IMG/VR virus record: IMGVR_UViG_3300050132_000038 | Span: 62,001 to 126,000 of that record | Strand: one strand, 5' to 3' | DNA length: 64,000 bases | Part shown: piece after piece, positions 6,206 through 45,778 of the stretch | Layout of the letters: every line of letters begins with the position of its first letter | Position numbering within the stretch: position 1 is the stretch's first letter | The notes under the pieces: generated by a model | Told to the model about the DNA's origin: nothing | What the model saw: the letters and a program-made list of their open reading frames with translations, nothing else | Databases searched by the model: none | Position numbers and translations under genes: made by a program

Positions 6206-6306
6206 ATTGGGATAGGGTTTTCTATAATTCTAGTTGATGGAAATTTCGTTATTCCGTCAGTAGCGTGAGTCCGTTCACGCTAGGTTCTCCGTTGTGCCGA
6301 CACCTT

Positions 6307-6336
6307 ATTATCGCATGAAAATGGGGGTCATGTCAA
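6307..6336 (-). promoter_or_regulatory. Sigma70-like promoter
   Basis: TTGACA-18 nt-GATAAT with extended -10 TG. Confidence 0.7.
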
Positions 6337-6359
6337 TACCCCCACTTTTCGGGGTATTG
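6334..6359. terminator. Hairpin overlapping the -35 box
   Basis: caatacccc/ggggtattg 9-bp inverted repeat. Confidence 0.5.
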
Positions 6360-6366
6360 CACAGAA

Positions 6367-6531
6367 TTATTCAGTGATCTCGCCTTCTGGGTAGTGAATA
6401 GCTTCCCAGGCCATCATAGCATCAGTGATCTCGATGAACTCAGGATTCACCCAGGGATCCTCGTCCGTGTCCACAATAGCGTTGCCCTTAGCTGTGGCCT
6501 GCCTGTACTCTTCTTCAGTACTGATAATCAT
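6367..6531 (-). CDS. 54-aa hypothetical protein (not in ORF track)
   Basis: MIISTEEEYRQATAKGNAIVDTDEDPWVNPEFIEITDAMMAWEAIHYPEGEITE, preceded by GGAGG. Confidence 0.65.
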   Translation of the reverse strand: MIISTEEEYRQATAKGNAIVDTDEDPWVNPEFIEITDAMMAWEAIHYPEGEITE

Positions 6532-6809
6532 AAGACCTCCCTGGTATCTGTAAAATCCTTTGCGAGCAGGATCGGCTTGTCTAGTGCTTCGAGCATTCTA
6601 TGCAGAACTCTTTTAGCACCGTCATCCCCTGCATCTACGTCCCACACAATAGTGGCCGGGCGCGTACTGTACGACTGTGGAACATCATTATAGTAAGAGA
6701 CTTCGTGTACTGCTCTCCAAGTCTCTTTCTCGCCCCCAACTAAGGCAGTGCTCTCCACTACGCGATAATTCCAACTACTCTTGGGTTCGGTCGTATCAAT
6801 GATCGTCAT
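6528..6809 (-). CDS. Hypothetical phage protein
   Basis: WNYRVV...AVHEVSYY...LHRMLEALDKPIL phage-type motif. Confidence 0.7.
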   Translation of the reverse strand: MTIIDTTEPKSSWNYRVVESTALVGGEKETWRAVHEVSYYNDVPQSYSTRPATIVWDVDAGDDGAKRVLHRMLEALDKPILLAKDFTDTREVL

Positions 6810-6824
6810 TCAGGCCCCTAGTGG

Positions 6825-7151
6825 TTAGCGAACGATTGCAATGCCTGAGGTGTTCTCGAGGTAGATGTCTTCCAGCTGCTTGGGTACCGGACGCATGAGA
6901 ATGTACATCTCCGTGTCAAAGTCGATCTCGTCTAGTGCAGGGAATACACCGAGCGTTAGGTAAGGCATCATCGAGATTGACAGTTGACCTTGTTGACCCG
7001 TGCCTTGAACAATCAATGACATTGGCTTCTTGAGGGTTGCATACAGCATATCGTTTACTACTAGGCGCCCCAGTACGGTACTACCATTAGTAAGGTGAAT
7101 GGCAACTACGTCGTTGAGTTTCGGCTGGTGGGTGTTATTGATTTCAGTCAT
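6825..7151 (-). CDS. Hypothetical protein, Sm-like fold suspected
   Basis: VVAIHLTNGSTVLGRL...LKKPMSL...SMMPYL pattern. Confidence 0.7.
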   Translation of the reverse strand: MTEINNTHQPKLNDVVAIHLTNGSTVLGRLVVNDMLYATLKKPMSLIVQGTGQQGQLSISMMPYLTLGVFPALDEIDFDTEMYILMRPVPKQLEDIYLENTSGIAIVR

Positions 7152-7155
7152 TGTG

Positions 7156-7611
7156 TTACTCCTGGGAACAGTGTTTGTTGTAGAGGGTATCGATAGCGAA
7201 GCTCACAATCGCTTCTCTGCTCTTAAGTTGTGGGTAGATCTTTTTCAGGTAATCCAGCTTGCTTTGTAGTTCTCGGTCTAGTGTTAGGAGCACCGAGGTA
7301 GTCTTATTCGGATCTCCCTTTACTAACTCGAAGGCATTGAACACGCGGGTCGCTAACCAGAGCAACTTCTTAGTGTGCTCACTAGACTCTCCTGCTAGTA
7401 AATCAAAGTACGGCTTCTTTGAAGAAAGCCGATTTGCAATCTTATGCAGCTTCGCATGATGGGAGTCGCACAGGCTCACTAACGGCCCATCTGTACCACC
7501 CGCCTTCCTCGGGATTATGTGGTGTTCCTCTCGGAGGCAGGGGCCAGGAGGAACTGAATCTACGAAGCGTCTCTCGCAGACCCAGCAATACGGCAATGTG
7601 ATACTTTCCAT
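7156..7611 (-). CDS. HNH endonuclease-family protein
   Basis: CWVC...EEHHIIPRKAGGTD...VSLCDSHHAKLH zinc-HNH motif. Confidence 0.75.
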   Translation of the reverse strand: MESITLPYCWVCERRFVDSVPPGPCLREEHHIIPRKAGGTDGPLVSLCDSHHAKLHKIANRLSSKKPYFDLLAGESSEHTKKLLWLATRVFNAFELVKGDPNKTTSVLLTLDRELQSKLDYLKKIYPQLKSREAIVSFAIDTLYNKHCSQE

Positions 7612-42437: not shown

Positions 42438-43157
42438 CTACACTGCAGCCGACTTGGAAGCCTTAGACATAGCACTCAGCTTGGTCTTGACTGCTGCTAC
42501 AGTCTTCGGATGGTTCTTCAGGTTGTCACGCAGATACTTCAGCTCACGGCGATTGAAACGGGCACGGGTACGCAAAGCATTCAATGCCTTAATATCCGCT
42601 TCCGTTGCAACCTTGTCGGCAAACATAACGAAAGAAGCGGTGAGGCCGTTCTCGTCAGTTTCCAATCCTGCCTTAGCTGCCGAAGCCAGTGTGATTTCCT
42701 GATTGGGTCCGATCACCGAAACTGGGTTCTCTTCGTCTTCTTTGAAACCATCAGTGCGAGTAATCGACACGTTGGAATCAGCGATAGTACGAGGAGCACC
42801 TGCTTCCTTGATGTGCTGCGTGATGGCGAACAAACGTTGACGTTCTTCCTTGGCACCATCTTCACGGAGAATCTTTTGTGCGGTAGGTTCGTCGATGATA
42901 GTCAACAAACCATTACGCACTGCTGCCCGAAAATCTGTTGATTCGAGGATACGATGCTTCGGGAAGTTGGTGGTCAAGTCAACAGGCAACCAAGTCGAGG
43001 GAACCTTGAGAGCTTGTCCTTGTTGACCAACGTTACCTGGGATGGACAACAAGATGTCTCCGTTGATTTCCAGGAGGGACTCTGCGCCAGTGTTACGAAC
43101 CCAAACAGAACCCAGGGGGCCGAGAGTTTCCAATTGTGCAACGGTAAGCGTCTTCAT
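42438..43157 (-). CDS. Hypothetical protein (TWLP family)
   Basis: 239 aa; shares a domain with 47071..47763. Confidence 0.8.
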   Translation of the reverse strand: MKTLTVAQLETLGPLGSVWVRNTGAESLLEINGDILLSIPGNVGQQGQALKVPSTWLPVDLTTNFPKHRILESTDFRAAVRNGLLTIIDEPTAQKILREDGAKEERQRLFAITQHIKEAGAPRTIADSNVSITRTDGFKEDEENPVSVIGPNQEITLASAAKAGLETDENGLTASFVMFADKVATEADIKALNALRTRARFNRRELKYLRDNLKNHPKTVAAVKTKLSAMSKASKSAAV

Positions 43158-43230
43158 TTTGATTTTCCATTATAGTCCTGGGAAGGGTGGTTGACCGGGA
43201 TGGTCTTTGTGAACTCGTTGGTTCACGGGA

Positions 43231-43482
43231 TCACGAGTCTTGTAGCTCGTGTTTGATCTTGAATGCTAAACTATTGCGTAAGATATTTACAACAGCAGAA
43301 TCAATTGGTGGTAGACCTACTAAGGCTGCGAACTCAACTGGGGTAAAGTCTGAGTTTGCGAATACCTCACTATATTTACAGAGGCCGTTGACGCGGTGCT
43401 TCCACATACACTGAGAAGTCTCCAGTGGGCACTCTGCTACCGATAACTGTTTGTGGATGATAATGCAGTAGGCAGTCATCAC
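43231..43482 (-). CDS. Cys-rich hypothetical protein
   Basis: YCII...ECP...CMWKH...LCKY. Confidence 0.65.
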   Translation of the reverse strand: MMTAYCIIIHKQLSVAECPLETSQCMWKHRVNGLCKYSEVFANSDFTPVEFAALVGLPPIDSAVVNILRNSLAFKIKHELQDS

Positions 43483-44150
43483 GATACTCCATTAAGTATT
43501 TTTCGACGTTGATAGCGAATACGTTTTCTCAACTCTTCATCGACGTCCAAGGACTTCAACCACTCTTTGAACGGGAAGTCAACCTGCTTAGGCTGAACTA
43601 CCTTAGTTCCGTCATTAGCAAATTCCTTGTGTAGAACTTTTCGTTTAGCTTCAACGACAGCAGCCGCTTCATGAAGATCGTCGAAGTATCCTAGGTAGTA
43701 CAGAACACCGTTAGACCTAATCTGAGCGAACCACTTGTTCTTCCTAGCAGCCCAGCTAACACCTTTAATTCCAGATTTGTTATTTGATGCTAGAGAGGAG
43801 TTGGCTTGATTCTGTGCGTTAGTTGCTAGTCTGAGATTCTTCCAGCTGTTGTTAGTGTTATCTGTGTCGGCGTGATCCACTTCAAATTTCCCAGGGTCTT
43901 TACCAGTAACCAACTTCCAGATGATTCGGTGTATGTAGAAGTTAGAGTGGTTAAGCTGAACAATCGGGCGGCCTCCTGAGGTAGTACTGGATAACACTTT
44001 ACCGGAGAAGCGGGAATTCCAGCCATCCGCATTACCACTCGAAGGGAAATGACTATAAGGGCGAACTCTCCACACTAAGTTTCCCGTCTCTGGATCGTAG
44101 TCAAAGCACTCTTTGAGAAACTTCAGGCGAGGTAGTTTCTTAAAACGCAT
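43479..44150 (-). CDS. HNH homing endonuclease with AP2 domain
   Basis: FDYDPETGNL, IHRIIW, VDHADTDNTNNSWKNLRLAT..QN, SGIKGVSW...KWFAQI...YLGYFD. Confidence 0.9.
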   Translation of the reverse strand: MRFKKLPRLKFLKECFDYDPETGNLVWRVRPYSHFPSSGNADGWNSRFSGKVLSSTTSGGRPIVQLNHSNFYIHRIIWKLVTGKDPGKFEVDHADTDNTNNSWKNLRLATNAQNQANSSLASNNKSGIKGVSWAARKNKWFAQIRSNGVLYYLGYFDDLHEAAAVVEAKRKVLHKEFANDGTKVVQPKQVDFPFKEWLKSLDVDEELRKRIRYQRRKILNGVS

Positions 44151-44160
44151 GAGGGAGCTC

Positions 44161-45180
44161 CTAACTTACAGTGTTAAGAATCTTTCGTCTAATAGATTTT
44201 ATTTTCTTCCGCATAGCCTCGTCTACATCTAGGCTGGAAACCCAGGTGCGAAAGAAGTCTTCCGTCTTGAACGACACAGCCTGTCCCTCGGTTAAGTCTT
44301 CGGTGAGGACCATCTGCAGGTCCTCCTTCGACTTGAATGGCTTAATCATTACGATGTTTGAAAACTTACCGTAGTCCGATGCCGATACATCCGCCCCATC
44401 CTGGATGACTAGCTTCACTAGATTGAACCCACCCTCTGGAATAGTTGCCAGGTCATCTCGAGTGTTCAGTACGATAGTGTGCAGCTTGTATTTGGGGTCG
44501 TGCTTGACCAGCCGGATTTCGTAATCCTTCGGCCCGTTGAATTCTATGTGATGGAAATACTTTGGAAGGCTTTCTCCAAAGTTTTGTTGATATAGTGTTC
44601 CGCTGTAATACGTGTTACGGACTCTATGAGCGGTATGCAAATGTCCAGCGACGATAACGGACTTGGAGTCTGTAAGATCATCTGATCCCATGACACGCCC
44701 CGCGTCGTTCTTACTTCCGCGAACTTCTTTATGGTAGACATTGAGAGCCTTACTATCGAAGGATTCGTGAGGGTACGGGAGGAACCGAACTGGAGCACCG
44801 TCGATCTCTACCGTCTTTGGTTTAGTGTAGAACTTCACGTTAGACTTAGAGTACAAGAGCTTCAACAGTTCTAGGGAATGCCCGGTGTCCGGTGTTTCTC
44901 CATAGAGGTCATGGTTCCCTAGGATGATATGGAACGTGAAGTCATCGTTTGATGCAAGGAATCTTGAGAGGGCCATCATCCCCTGATACGAACCCCTGGG
45001 TGAATCAAAAATATCCCCGTACAGCAGAGTGGTATTGATCCCATGCTTCCTCCCGTATTGTAAAACCTTTTCCATCTCCTCCGTTACCATTTGATCGGAG
45101 TCCTGCACGTACTTCGATAGTCCACCCGACCCGTCTGCGCTCGACAGGTGCAGGTCCCCGATGCCCAAAAATTCAGCCAC
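44161..45180 (-). CDS. SbcD/Mre11 (T4 gp47-like) recombination nuclease subunit
   Basis: GDLHL, GDIFD, LGNHD, AGHLH, YSGTL..NFGE metallophosphoesterase motifs. Confidence 0.8.
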   Translation of the reverse strand: MAEFLGIGDLHLSSADGSGGLSKYVQDSDQMVTEEMEKVLQYGRKHGINTTLLYGDIFDSPRGSYQGMMALSRFLASNDDFTFHIILGNHDLYGETPDTGHSLELLKLLYSKSNVKFYTKPKTVEIDGAPVRFLPYPHESFDSKALNVYHKEVRGSKNDAGRVMGSDDLTDSKSVIVAGHLHTAHRVRNTYYSGTLYQQNFGESLPKYFHHIEFNGPKDYEIRLVKHDPKYKLHTIVLNTRDDLATIPEGGFNLVKLVIQDGADVSASDYGKFSNIVMIKPFKSKEDLQMVLTEDLTEGQAVSFKTEDFFRTWVSSLDVDEAMRKKIKSIRRKILNTVS

Positions 45181-45190
45181 AGCAATTCTC

Positions 45191-45382
45191 CTACTTCTTT
45201 AACTTAATACGAATCTCTACAGTTTCTTTCTTAGAGAAGTTTTCAGTTCCTACGTGATAGCGCCTACGAAGTACGATAGGGTCTAGGTTATCGCAAGCCT
45301 GTATCCAGCTGGAGGAAACAACATCGAGTTCCAGAGTGGAAGCACCGTCCTCGTCTAAACAGCTAATACTGAATACGCTCAT
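45191..45382 (-). CDS. Hypothetical protein
   Basis: Packed ORF. Confidence 0.55.
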   Translation of the reverse strand: MSVFSISCLDEDGASTLELDVVSSSWIQACDNLDPIVLRRRYHVGTENFSKKETVEIRIKLKK

Positions 45383-45594
45383 ATCAATACGCCACTAGGC
45401 CATGCTTTAGCTTCATTAAGACACCAGCCTAGGTAAAGACCCTCTACATAATCATCTAGATATCTACCGGCAGTGTCCTGAGTAAAATCAATTTTGGCGT
45501 CTGGGTAGTTGTCCTCAATCATAGATATGAATTTCTTCTGATTGTCCTCAGAGCCTAGTAGGGTTTTCCAACGCACACTACGATTAACTCTCAT
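45379..45594 (-). CDS. Hypothetical protein
   Basis: Packed ORF. Confidence 0.6.
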   Translation of the reverse strand: MRVNRSVRWKTLLGSEDNQKKFISMIEDNYPDAKIDFTQDTAGRYLDDYVEGLYLGWCLNEAKAWPSGVLI

Positions 45595-45778
45595 TAGTAT
45601 TCCTCCTCGTCAAACTCTAGTTCAAATCTAGCTTTGTGCTCTGTGCAGAACGTGTTGTACTTGCGATACTTGTTACCATCGTCGTCAGTAGGTAAAGTAT
45701 ATCCTACAGGTGCTCACAGTATTTGGCAACTACACCAGGAGAGTTAGGTATGAGGACCCATCTACAATTGTGAACCAT
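45594..45778 (-). pseudogene. Frameshifted Cys/His microgene
   Basis: MVHNCRWVLIPNSPGVVAKYCE continues in another frame as APVGYTLPTDDDGNKYRKYNTFCTEH...; 185 nt, one base short of a triplet multiple. Confidence 0.5.

What the first reader, a model, noticed from the sequence alone, without database searches (positions are those of the whole stretch)
43479..45180. Homing endonuclease carrying a copy of its neighbour's C-terminus
Seen: the SbcD-like nuclease ends FRTWVSSLDVDEAMRKKIKSIRRKILNTVS and the downstream HNH-AP2 ORF ends FKEWLKSLDVDEELRKRIRYQRRKILNGVS. Inference: the endonuclease invaded the 3' end of the nuclease gene, bringing a replacement C-terminus (and so an immune target site) and fusing in frame to the displaced original tail. 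This is the footprint of intron-less homing, and it predicts the cleavage site.
Basis: partly seen in the sequence, partly recalled or inferred. Interest (0 to 1): 0.6.

Follow-up and report, generated by a model that had tools for sequence, protein, structure and literature searches.

The report
Homing endonuclease carrying spare nuclease tail
A selfish HNH endonuclease gene has inserted into the end of a jumbo phage's Mre11/SbcD repair-nuclease gene, bringing a foreign replacement for the last 30 codons and reading on into the displaced original ones; close relatives without the insert show the intact target site, an arrangement known from fungal mitochondria that I did not find described for phages.

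Summary
The window comes from a 218.9 kb peat-metagenome jumbo phage related to Ralstonia phage phiRSL1. The Mre11/SbcD-like nuclease (44161-45180, minus strand) and the next ORF, an HNH_3+AP2 endonuclease (43479-44150), end in homologous tails of about 32 residues (E = 6e-10). Two metagenome contigs (L016, L017) and one contig in an independent sequencing run carry the same nuclease without the HNH. Removing exactly 682 nt (43572-44253) from the window rebuilds their sequence. The tail fused to the HNH differs from the L016 tail at 1 of 96 nt and at no residue. The tail on the nuclease differs at 47 of 96 nt, with third codon positions saturated, while the rest of the gene is 92% identical. 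The insert is therefore a cassette: foreign tail, stop codon, ribosome-binding site, then the HNH gene without a stop of its own. The tail is a separate helix-turn-helix behind a disordered linker, where Mre11 proteins bind Rad50. A complex prediction with the phage's SbcC-like protein gave only weak support. Cleavage, homing and the donor lineage are untested. The arrangement parallels mobile-ORF gene hybrids of fungal mitochondria.

The parts
44161..45180 (-). Mre11/SbcD-like nuclease gene (339 aa), now a hybrid of native body and foreign tail
   Evidence: Pfam Metallophos 29.8 bits, above the cut-off. phrog_100 SbcD-like, E = 1.6e-37. AlphaFold model pLDDT 89.5, with top PDB matches to Mre11 chains of Mre11:Rad50 and E. 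coli SbcCD complexes, E = 9e-15.
44923..45194 (-). 5' part of the nuclease gene with no mismatch to the HNH-free allele L016
   Evidence: Mismatch map. The 204 nt further upstream are 99% identical. Run X4 contigs also match perfectly here.
44254..44922 (-). About 670 nt of nuclease body that is about 10% diverged from L016; candidate co-conversion tract (inferred)
   Evidence: 73 mismatches, all between 44922 and 44252. A 180-nt block (44655-44834) is identical to L017, so the tract is itself mosaic.
43572..44253 (-). Inserted cassette, 682 nt, absent from L016, L017 and a contig of run X4
   Evidence: blastn breakpoints. Deleting it rebuilds the L016 sequence across the junction. X4 contig joint skips 682 nt.
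44161..44253 (-). Tail A: foreign replacement C-terminus (codons 310-339 plus TAG)
   Evidence: 47 of 96 nt and 11 of 32 aa differ from the L016 tail; 22 of 32 third positions differ; dN 0.50. Keeps the family-conserved W313, I327, R331 and N336. Forms helices 306-316 and 321-337.
44151..44162 (-). AGGAG ribosome-binding site overlapping the nuclease stop codon, 7 nt before the HNH ATG; 10-nt spacer
   Evidence: Read directly from the sequence.
43479..44150 (-). HNH_3 + AP2 endonuclease ORF (223 aa): 193 cassette codons plus 30 native tail codons
   Evidence: Pfam HNH_3 56.6 bits and AP2 22.3 bits. phrog_99, E = 1.5e-62. Invariant D92, H93, N105 and N114 kept. Best PDB match is I-HmuI, then AP2 domains.
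43806..43937 (-). HNH_3 catalytic domain (residues 72-115)
   Evidence: the only HNH_3 match in the genome.
43662..43775 (-). AP2 DNA-binding domain (residues 126-163)
43572..43607 (-). Linker of about 12 codons between the family's normal C-terminus and tail B; ends in GACTTC CCG
   Evidence: All 11 free-standing relatives stop within a few residues of the conserved HGEFA motif. Low pLDDT in this segment, below 50 at residues 188-190.
43479..43571 (-). Tail B: displaced native C-terminus of the nuclease (30 codons plus TGA), in frame with the HNH
   Evidence: Last 30 residues identical to P0002. DNA differs from L016 at one position. Predicted helix-turn-helix at residues 194-200 and 205-219.
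43231..43479 (-). Conserved 82-aa downstream gene whose ATG shares one base with the stop of tail B (TGATG)
   Evidence: Same one-base overlap between native nuclease and this gene in L016 (4961).

Best explanation
A mobile cassette sits inside the 3' end of the phage's Mre11/SbcD-like nuclease gene. It consists of a foreign copy of the last 30 codons of the nuclease gene, a stop codon, a ribosome-binding site and an HNH-AP2 endonuclease gene that has no stop of its own. It entered between codons 309 and 310, at the start of the C-terminal helix-turn-helix module. The foreign tail completes the nuclease, so the gene stays functional. Its saturated nucleotide divergence removes the native sequence at the left junction. 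The native tail is pushed downstream and is translated as the C-terminus of the endonuclease, keeping the original stop/start overlap with the next gene. These points are shown: the insertion, its exact limits, which tail is native and which is foreign, and intact catalytic residues. These points are inferred: the HNH protein recognises the intact native sequence spanning GACTTC|TTCAAAGAG in naive phages; it nicks or cuts there or nearby during co-infection; and repair from the invaded genome copies the cassette and some upstream flank (intron-less homing with co-conversion). The right-hand junction is non-homologous, so it was probably made once by illegitimate joining at or near the break.
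For: Empty-site alleles come from three independent data sets: L016, L017 and a contig of run X4 that skips 682 nt. Tail B differs from the L016 tail at 1 of 96 nt and 0 aa. Tail A differs at 47 of 96 nt, while the gene body has dN 0.024 and dS 0.34. Body identity to P0002 is 96.4% but tail A identity only 65.6%; other pairs with bodies at least 90% identical have tails 91-97% identical. A tail-B-only search hits just P0002 and P0003. None of 13 nuclease loci from relatives has the HNH. Free-standing HNH-AP2 relatives end about 40 residues earlier. HNH_3 domain, conserved catalytic residues and an I-HmuI top structural match are present. There is no intron RNA and no intein domain. The sharp change from 0 to about 10% mismatches at 44922 fits a co-conversion tract. 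The HNH+AP2 architecture is a recognised homing-endonuclease family in phages (PMC10448857).
Against: No enzymology exists, so neither cleavage nor preferential inheritance is shown. All HNH-bearing contigs are near-identical and may represent one population, so spread is not documented. No donor was found: no sampled nuclease has a tail close to tail A, and no HNH relative exceeds 45% identity. These phages are mosaic elsewhere too, so the diverged upstream tract need not stem from the insertion event. Free-standing endonucleases may cut far from their insertion site (PMC2988022).
Confidence: 0.85

Rival explanations
1. The fusion is not just a scar. By capturing the nuclease's partner-binding helix-turn-helix, the endonuclease docks on the phage's SbcC/Rad50-like protein. 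That would either couple its break to the recombination machinery or compete with the nuclease. This reading is compatible with the insertion history above.
For: The tail is an autonomous helix-turn-helix behind a disordered linker in both proteins, as in Mre11 proteins solved with Rad50. The genome encodes a 748-aa SbcC-like protein. The complex prediction of that protein with HNH residues 181-223 scored 0.50 against a best control of 0.05. The runs agreed in at least 70% of contacts, and partner pLDDT was about 70. The verdict was weak support; in the tool's calibration the mark was reached by 51 of 78 solved complexes and 2 of 108 mismatched pairs, but scores at or under 0.60 were few among the solved complexes.
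Against: Tail B is one nucleotide away from the native allele, so the insertion is too recent for retention to indicate selection. No other HNH-AP2 relative carries such a tail. The complex score is in the range where passes are more often wrong than right unless the prior was high, and a pass may reflect memory of solved Mre11:Rad50 complexes.
Confidence: 0.15
2. The HNH gene is a passenger without homing activity, either decayed or serving another role, that landed here once by illegitimate recombination. The spare tail merely allowed the phage to survive the accident.
For: Only one HNH-bearing lineage is sampled. No relative has this HNH at this site.
Against: The compact foreign-tail/stop/ribosome-site/ORF unit implies the tail and HNH were already neighbours in a donor, which is the normal position of a free-standing endonuclease next to its target gene. 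Catalytic residues are intact. The gene family is a known homing family (PMC10448857).
Confidence: 0.1
3. The tail was duplicated in tandem within this genome and one copy then diverged, with the HNH arriving between the copies later.
For: Two homologous tails in direct orientation.
Against: The divergence is extremely asymmetric: 1 versus 47 differences in 96 nt relative to the same outgroup. Tail A is saturated at synonymous sites while the gene body has dS 0.34. The left boundary of divergence coincides with the insert boundary to the base.
Confidence: 0.02
4. The HNH-free alleles are secondary losses of the cassette rather than naive targets.
For: A 6-nt GACTTC repeat flanks most of the insert.
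Against: Deletion between those repeats would leave an extra CCG codon that L016 and L017 lack. All 13 loci from more distant relatives also lack the HNH and have single tails.
Confidence: 0.03

Closest known systems
Mobile-ORF gene hybrids of fungal mitochondria (Allomyces macrogynus atp6; Glomus atp6, atp9, cox2, nad3; Rhizopus atp9; Mortierella cox2), as described in PMC3630166
   Same: An endonuclease ORF enters the 3' part of a gene and carries a foreign C-terminus that completes it. The native C-terminus lies downstream and is nearly identical to that of a close relative, while the foreign copy is far more diverged (64-81% there, 51% here). Reading frames can be in phase.
   Different: The host here is a dsDNA jumbo phage, not an organelle. 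The endonuclease is HNH+AP2 rather than LAGLIDADG or GIY-YIG. The foreign tail ends in a stop codon and the endonuclease has its own ribosome site and ATG. It is the endonuclease, not the host gene, that is fused to the native remnant.
Intron-less homing of free-standing endonucleases in T-even phages (Seg and Mob proteins; PMC2988022)
   Same: A free-standing endonuclease gene sits next to a conserved DNA-metabolism gene, with presence/absence polymorphism among relatives and diverged flanks expected from co-conversion. HNH members nick one strand.
   Different: In the description I read (PMC2988022), the T4 elements are free-standing genes with no mention of duplicated or replaced host coding sequence; here the element is inside a gene and brings a spare gene end. 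Activity is untested here.
HNH+AP2 homing endonucleases of phages, cyanobacteria and protists (IPA-HNH of ICP1, PMC10448857); I-HmuI as structural reference
   Same: N-terminal HNH domain followed by an AP2 DNA-binding domain. Best structural matches are I-HmuI and AP2 domains.
   Different: At most 45% identity to any sampled member. It is the only one with a host-gene tail appended.
Endonuclease-split 'genes in pieces' in phages (from my own recollection: Aeh1 nrdA split by mobE, T4 genes 39/60)
   Same: An endonuclease gene lies within an essential gene without an intron or intein.
   Different: Those genes are left split into two polypeptides that reassemble. Here the gene is kept whole by a replacement end.

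Membership tests
Mre11/SbcD nuclease | Calcineurin-like phosphoesterase domain | tested here: met
   Pfam Metallophos 29.8 bits against a cut-off of 21.5; phrog_100.
Mre11/SbcD nuclease | Mre11 fold (nuclease plus capping domain) | tested here: met
   Foldseek top hits 3qg5_C, 3tho_B and 6s6v_A, E = 1e-13 to 1e-15, TM about 0.6.
Mre11/SbcD nuclease | C-terminal helix-turn-helix that binds the Rad50/SbcC coiled coil | tested here: inconclusive
   The element is predicted behind a disordered linker. Binding has only weak in-silico support: 0.50 against a best control of 0.05.
Mre11/SbcD nuclease | Rad50/SbcC partner encoded in the genome | tested here: met
   748-aa ORF at G000:C1:200560-202806, phrog_77 E = 2e-43. 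The Pfam SbcC_Walker_B and AAA_23 matches fall just below their cut-offs.
HNH homing endonuclease (HNH_3 + AP2) | HNH catalytic domain with conserved residues | tested here: met
   HNH_3 56.6 bits against a cut-off of 24.8. D92, H93, N105 and N114 are invariant in 12 sequences. I-HmuI is the best PDB match.
HNH homing endonuclease (HNH_3 + AP2) | AP2 DNA-binding domain | tested here: inconclusive
   Pfam AP2 scores 22.3 bits, below the 33.3 cut-off. However, the model matches plant AP2 domains, and aligned relatives have AP2 annotated.
HNH homing endonuclease (HNH_3 + AP2) | Presence/absence at one defined site among close relatives | tested here: met
   A 682-nt block is present in the window and absent in L016, L017 and a run X4 contig.
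HNH homing endonuclease (HNH_3 + AP2) | Site-specific cleavage of the empty allele and super-Mendelian inheritance | not testable with these tools
   Needs enzyme assays and crosses.
Mobile-ORF C-terminal replacement hybrid | Foreign C-terminus upstream of the endonuclease ORF, and a native C-terminus downstream that matches a close relative | tested here: met
   Tail B differs from L016 at 1 of 96 nt; tail A at 47 of 96 nt.
Mobile-ORF C-terminal replacement hybrid | Hybrid gene remains intact and plausibly functional | tested here: met
   The ORF is open. Tail A keeps the family-conserved residues and the predicted helix-turn-helix. Function itself was not assayed.
Intron- or intein-borne endonuclease | Group I/II intron RNA or Hint/intein domain around the endonuclease | tested here: not met
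   No Rfam match at E up to 1 in 42900-45700. No intein domain in Pfam. A stop codon and a ribosome site separate the two ORFs.

The most novel reading that the evidence does not exclude
The endonuclease has acquired a working copy of the Mre11 partner-binding module and uses it to ride on the phage's Rad50/SbcC complex. The enzyme that makes the break would then be physically coupled to the machine that resects and repairs it. That would be a selfish element hijacking the very repair nuclease whose gene it invades.
Probability: 0.12. Interest if true: 0.8.

Novelty: new variant of a known kind. Interest (0 to 1): 0.55.

Why it matters
The locus offers a natural filled-site/empty-site pair with base-level resolution. 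It shows that a phage homing endonuclease can colonise the inside of a conserved gene without an intron or intein, by carrying a spare gene end. The strategy is documented for fungal mitochondria, and I did not find it described for phages in the papers searched. It gives a precise, testable target for an uncharacterised HNH-AP2 enzyme. It also shows that the swapped unit coincides with a structural module, the partner-binding helix-turn-helix behind a flexible linker, which may explain why this position tolerates replacement. For annotation it is a warning: short duplicated gene ends next to nuclease genes can mark such cassettes, and the 223-aa protein is a chimera.

Tried and rejected
- **Phage collection, DNA search:** megablast of the locus found nothing.
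- **Named relatives:** phiRSL1, BcepSauron and Motura (54-56% and 41% identity) were too distant to tell the tails apart. The same held for six IMG/VR loci at 58-64%.
- **Donor searches failed:** HNH relatives in viral and metagenome contigs reach at most 43-45% identity. No sampled nuclease tail is close to tail A. A viral-contig scan with tail A found no relative (one search was a query that was too short).
- **Generality not shown:** long HNH relatives are tandem HNH-AP2 doublets or carry extra AP2 repeats, not host-gene remnants. Extra genes at the same boundary in L017 and L016 match no family.
- **Uninformative searches:** the sequence search of solved structures gave only spurious ankyrin-repeat hits. 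The promoter/terminator scan gave no more than chance. Insert GC (45.2%) is close to the window's 48.5% and says nothing.
- **Artefact set aside:** a 40-nt record in run X3 at 43667-43696 is a palindromic fold-back artefact, not a variant.
- **Literature:** searches for a phage precedent of the tail duplication found none. That is not proof of absence, since subscription journals are not covered.
- searches failed on a term format and were repeated.
- **Complex prediction:** the result was weak support only and is used only for the rival and novel readings.

Full report
**Observation.** On the minus strand the window holds a 339-aa ORF (44161-45180), followed after 10 nt by a 223-aa ORF (43479-44150). 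Their C-termini align at 23 of 41 identities, E = 6e-10, and nothing else in the two proteins aligns. The window is bases 62001-126000 of a 218,861-bp IMG/VR virus record with direct terminal repeats. The same DNA occurs in peat metagenomes.

**The two genes.**
- The first protein has a calcineurin-like phosphoesterase domain and matches the SbcD-like phage family phrog_100. Its AlphaFold model (pLDDT 89.5) matches Mre11 chains of Mre11:Rad50 and E. coli SbcCD structures at E down to 9e-15.
- Its nearest named relatives are the nucleases of the jumbo phages phiRSL1 (56%) and BcepSauron/Saruman (54%).
- The second protein has an HNH_3 domain well above the Pfam cut-off and an AP2 domain below it. 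It matches phrog_99 at E = 1.5e-62. Its model is best matched by the HNH homing endonuclease I-HmuI and then by plant AP2 domains.
- It is the only HNH_3 gene in the genome.

**Empty-site alleles.**
- A search of the large protein collection with tail B alone returned just the query and two nucleases, P0002 and P0003. These are also the closest nucleases overall, at 94% and 90% identity.
- The last 30 residues of P0002 are identical to the last 30 residues of the HNH protein.
- Their contigs L016 and L017 have no HNH gene. In L016 the nuclease stop shares one base with the start of the next 82-aa gene, exactly as tail B does in the window.
- blastn places window 45194-44252 on L016 3928-4870 and window 43580-43180 on L016 4863-5259. 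Deleting window 43572-44253, 682 nt, rebuilds the L016 sequence across the junction apart from scattered single-base differences.
- In a peat run from another study and year (X4), one contig joins the same two flanks and skips 682 nt. Another run (X5) holds a perfect 151-nt piece of the HNH gene.
- None of the 13 nuclease loci fetched from relatives contains the HNH.

**Which tail is native.**
- Over 32 codons, tail B differs from the L016 tail at 1 nt and no residue.
- Tail A differs at 47 of 96 nt, 11 residues and 22 of 32 third positions. Synonymous divergence is saturated and dN is 0.50.
- The 306 upstream codons have dN 0.024 and dS 0.34.
- Across 47 family members, pairs with bodies at least 90% identical have tails 91-97% identical. 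The window against P0002 has 96.4% in the body but 65.6% in tail A, a value typical of lineages only 70-80% identical.
- Tail A is therefore foreign and tail B is the displaced original.
- A tandem duplication within this genome cannot give this asymmetry. Secondary loss of the cassette between the flanking GACTTC repeats would leave a CCG codon that the empty alleles lack.

**Anatomy of the cassette.**
- The 682 nt consist of 93 nt of tail A with its TAG, a 10-nt spacer and 579 nt (193 codons) of HNH ORF.
- An AGGAG overlaps the TAG and lies 7 nt before the HNH ATG. The foreign tail and the endonuclease gene therefore form one tight unit, as expected if the HNH once sat just downstream of the nuclease gene in a donor phage.
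- All 11 free-standing relatives of the HNH end within a few residues of the conserved HGEFA motif. The window's protein continues with about 12 linker residues and then tail B. It has no stop of its own and borrows the native one, which preserves the overlap with the next gene.
- No Rfam family, and thus no group I or II intron, is found in 42900-45700. No intein domain is present.

**The tail as a module.**
- The nuclease model has a disordered stretch at 299-305, followed by helices 306-316 and 321-337. The junction (codons 309/310) lies at the start of this helix-turn-helix.
- In solved Mre11:Rad50 complexes, a C-terminal element of this kind binds the Rad50 coiled coil. This is established knowledge of the family; the entries are listed.
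- The phage encodes a 748-aa SbcC-like protein far outside the window.
- In the HNH model, tail B again forms a helix-turn-helix behind a low-confidence linker.
- A complex prediction of the SbcC-like protein with HNH residues 181-223 scored 0.50 in three agreeing runs, against a best control of 0.05, with partner pLDDT about 70. The tool calls this weak support. In its calibration the mark was reached by 51 of 78 solved complexes and 2 of 108 mismatched pairs, but scores at or under 0.60 were rare among true complexes, and a pass may reflect memory of solved complexes.
- I take this as modest support that the tail is the partner-binding element. That would explain why an invading element must supply a replacement. 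It is not evidence that the fused copy is used.

**Flanks.**
- The window has no mismatch to L016 from 45194 to 44923, and the 204 nt further upstream are 99% identical. It then has 73 mismatches between 44922 and 44252. Contigs of run X4 show the same pattern.
- This is what co-conversion of the upstream flank during homing would leave.
- However, a 180-nt block within the tract is identical to L017, and the contigs are mosaic elsewhere. The link to the insertion event is therefore an inference.
- On the other side, foreign sequence ends abruptly at a non-homologous junction and tail B is recipient-type. This suggests the right end was joined at or close to the break.

**Mechanism.**
- The left half of the native site survives next to tail A and the right half survives in tail B, but the two halves are nowhere contiguous.
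- A recognition sequence that spans GACTTC|TTCAAAGAG would therefore be present in naive phages and absent from the invaded genome.
- I propose that the HNH-AP2 protein binds this region in a co-infecting naive phage and nicks or cuts nearby, and that repair copies the cassette.
- The exact cut cannot be read from the sequence. Free-standing phage endonucleases often cleave away from their insertion site, and HNH members nick one strand (PMC2988022).

**Comparison with what is known.**
- The architecture matches the mobile-ORF gene hybrids of fungal mitochondria. First described for Allomyces atp6 and found in several Glomus genes, these have a foreign C-terminus carried by an endonuclease ORF that replaces the native one, which persists downstream and matches a close relative (PMC3630166).
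- It also fits intron-less homing of T-even phages (PMC2988022) and the HNH+AP2 endonuclease family (PMC10448857).
- I found no description of the spare-tail arrangement in a phage, but the searchable library is incomplete.
- I therefore rate it a new variant of a known kind. It is a clean, well-resolved case rather than a new principle.

**Limits.**
- There is no biochemical evidence.
- The donor lineage is unsampled.
- All HNH-bearing contigs may come from one population.

Noticed in passing
L027:1901-7172 (contig OUWB010007277.1, a 249 kb related jumbo phage): A PolA-type DNA polymerase gene is broken up. A homologous HNH-AP2 (35% identical) is embedded in frame inside the 932-aa N-terminal ORF. 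A reverse-strand 395-aa ORF (DUF7487, phrog_3339 'homing endonuclease') follows, and the polymerase resumes in a separate ORF at 6285-7172.
   Followed up: partly
window 45187-45194; L016:3526-3927: L016 carries an extra 128-aa gene of no known family directly upstream of the nuclease, which the window lacks. Run X4 shows a 115-nt loose end at the same point, so this is a second presence/absence polymorphism beside the nuclease gene.
   Followed up: partly
L017:1907-2778, corresponding to window 43479: L017 has two extra genes (209 and 80 aa, no family match) inserted exactly after the nuclease stop codon. More distant relatives have other small genes there, including a NUDIX hydrolase in L010. 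The 3' boundary of the nuclease gene is a variable spot in this phage group.
   Followed up: partly
window 44655-44834: This 180-nt block inside the nuclease gene is identical to L017, although the flanking sequence differs from L017 by 7-40%. It indicates fine-scale recombination among these peat phages.
   Followed up: no
window 43667-43696: In run X3 the assembly breaks here, with a 40-nt low-depth record that reads as a perfect palindrome of the local sequence. It is most likely a fold-back artefact and not a variant.
   Followed up: yes
   Followed up: partly
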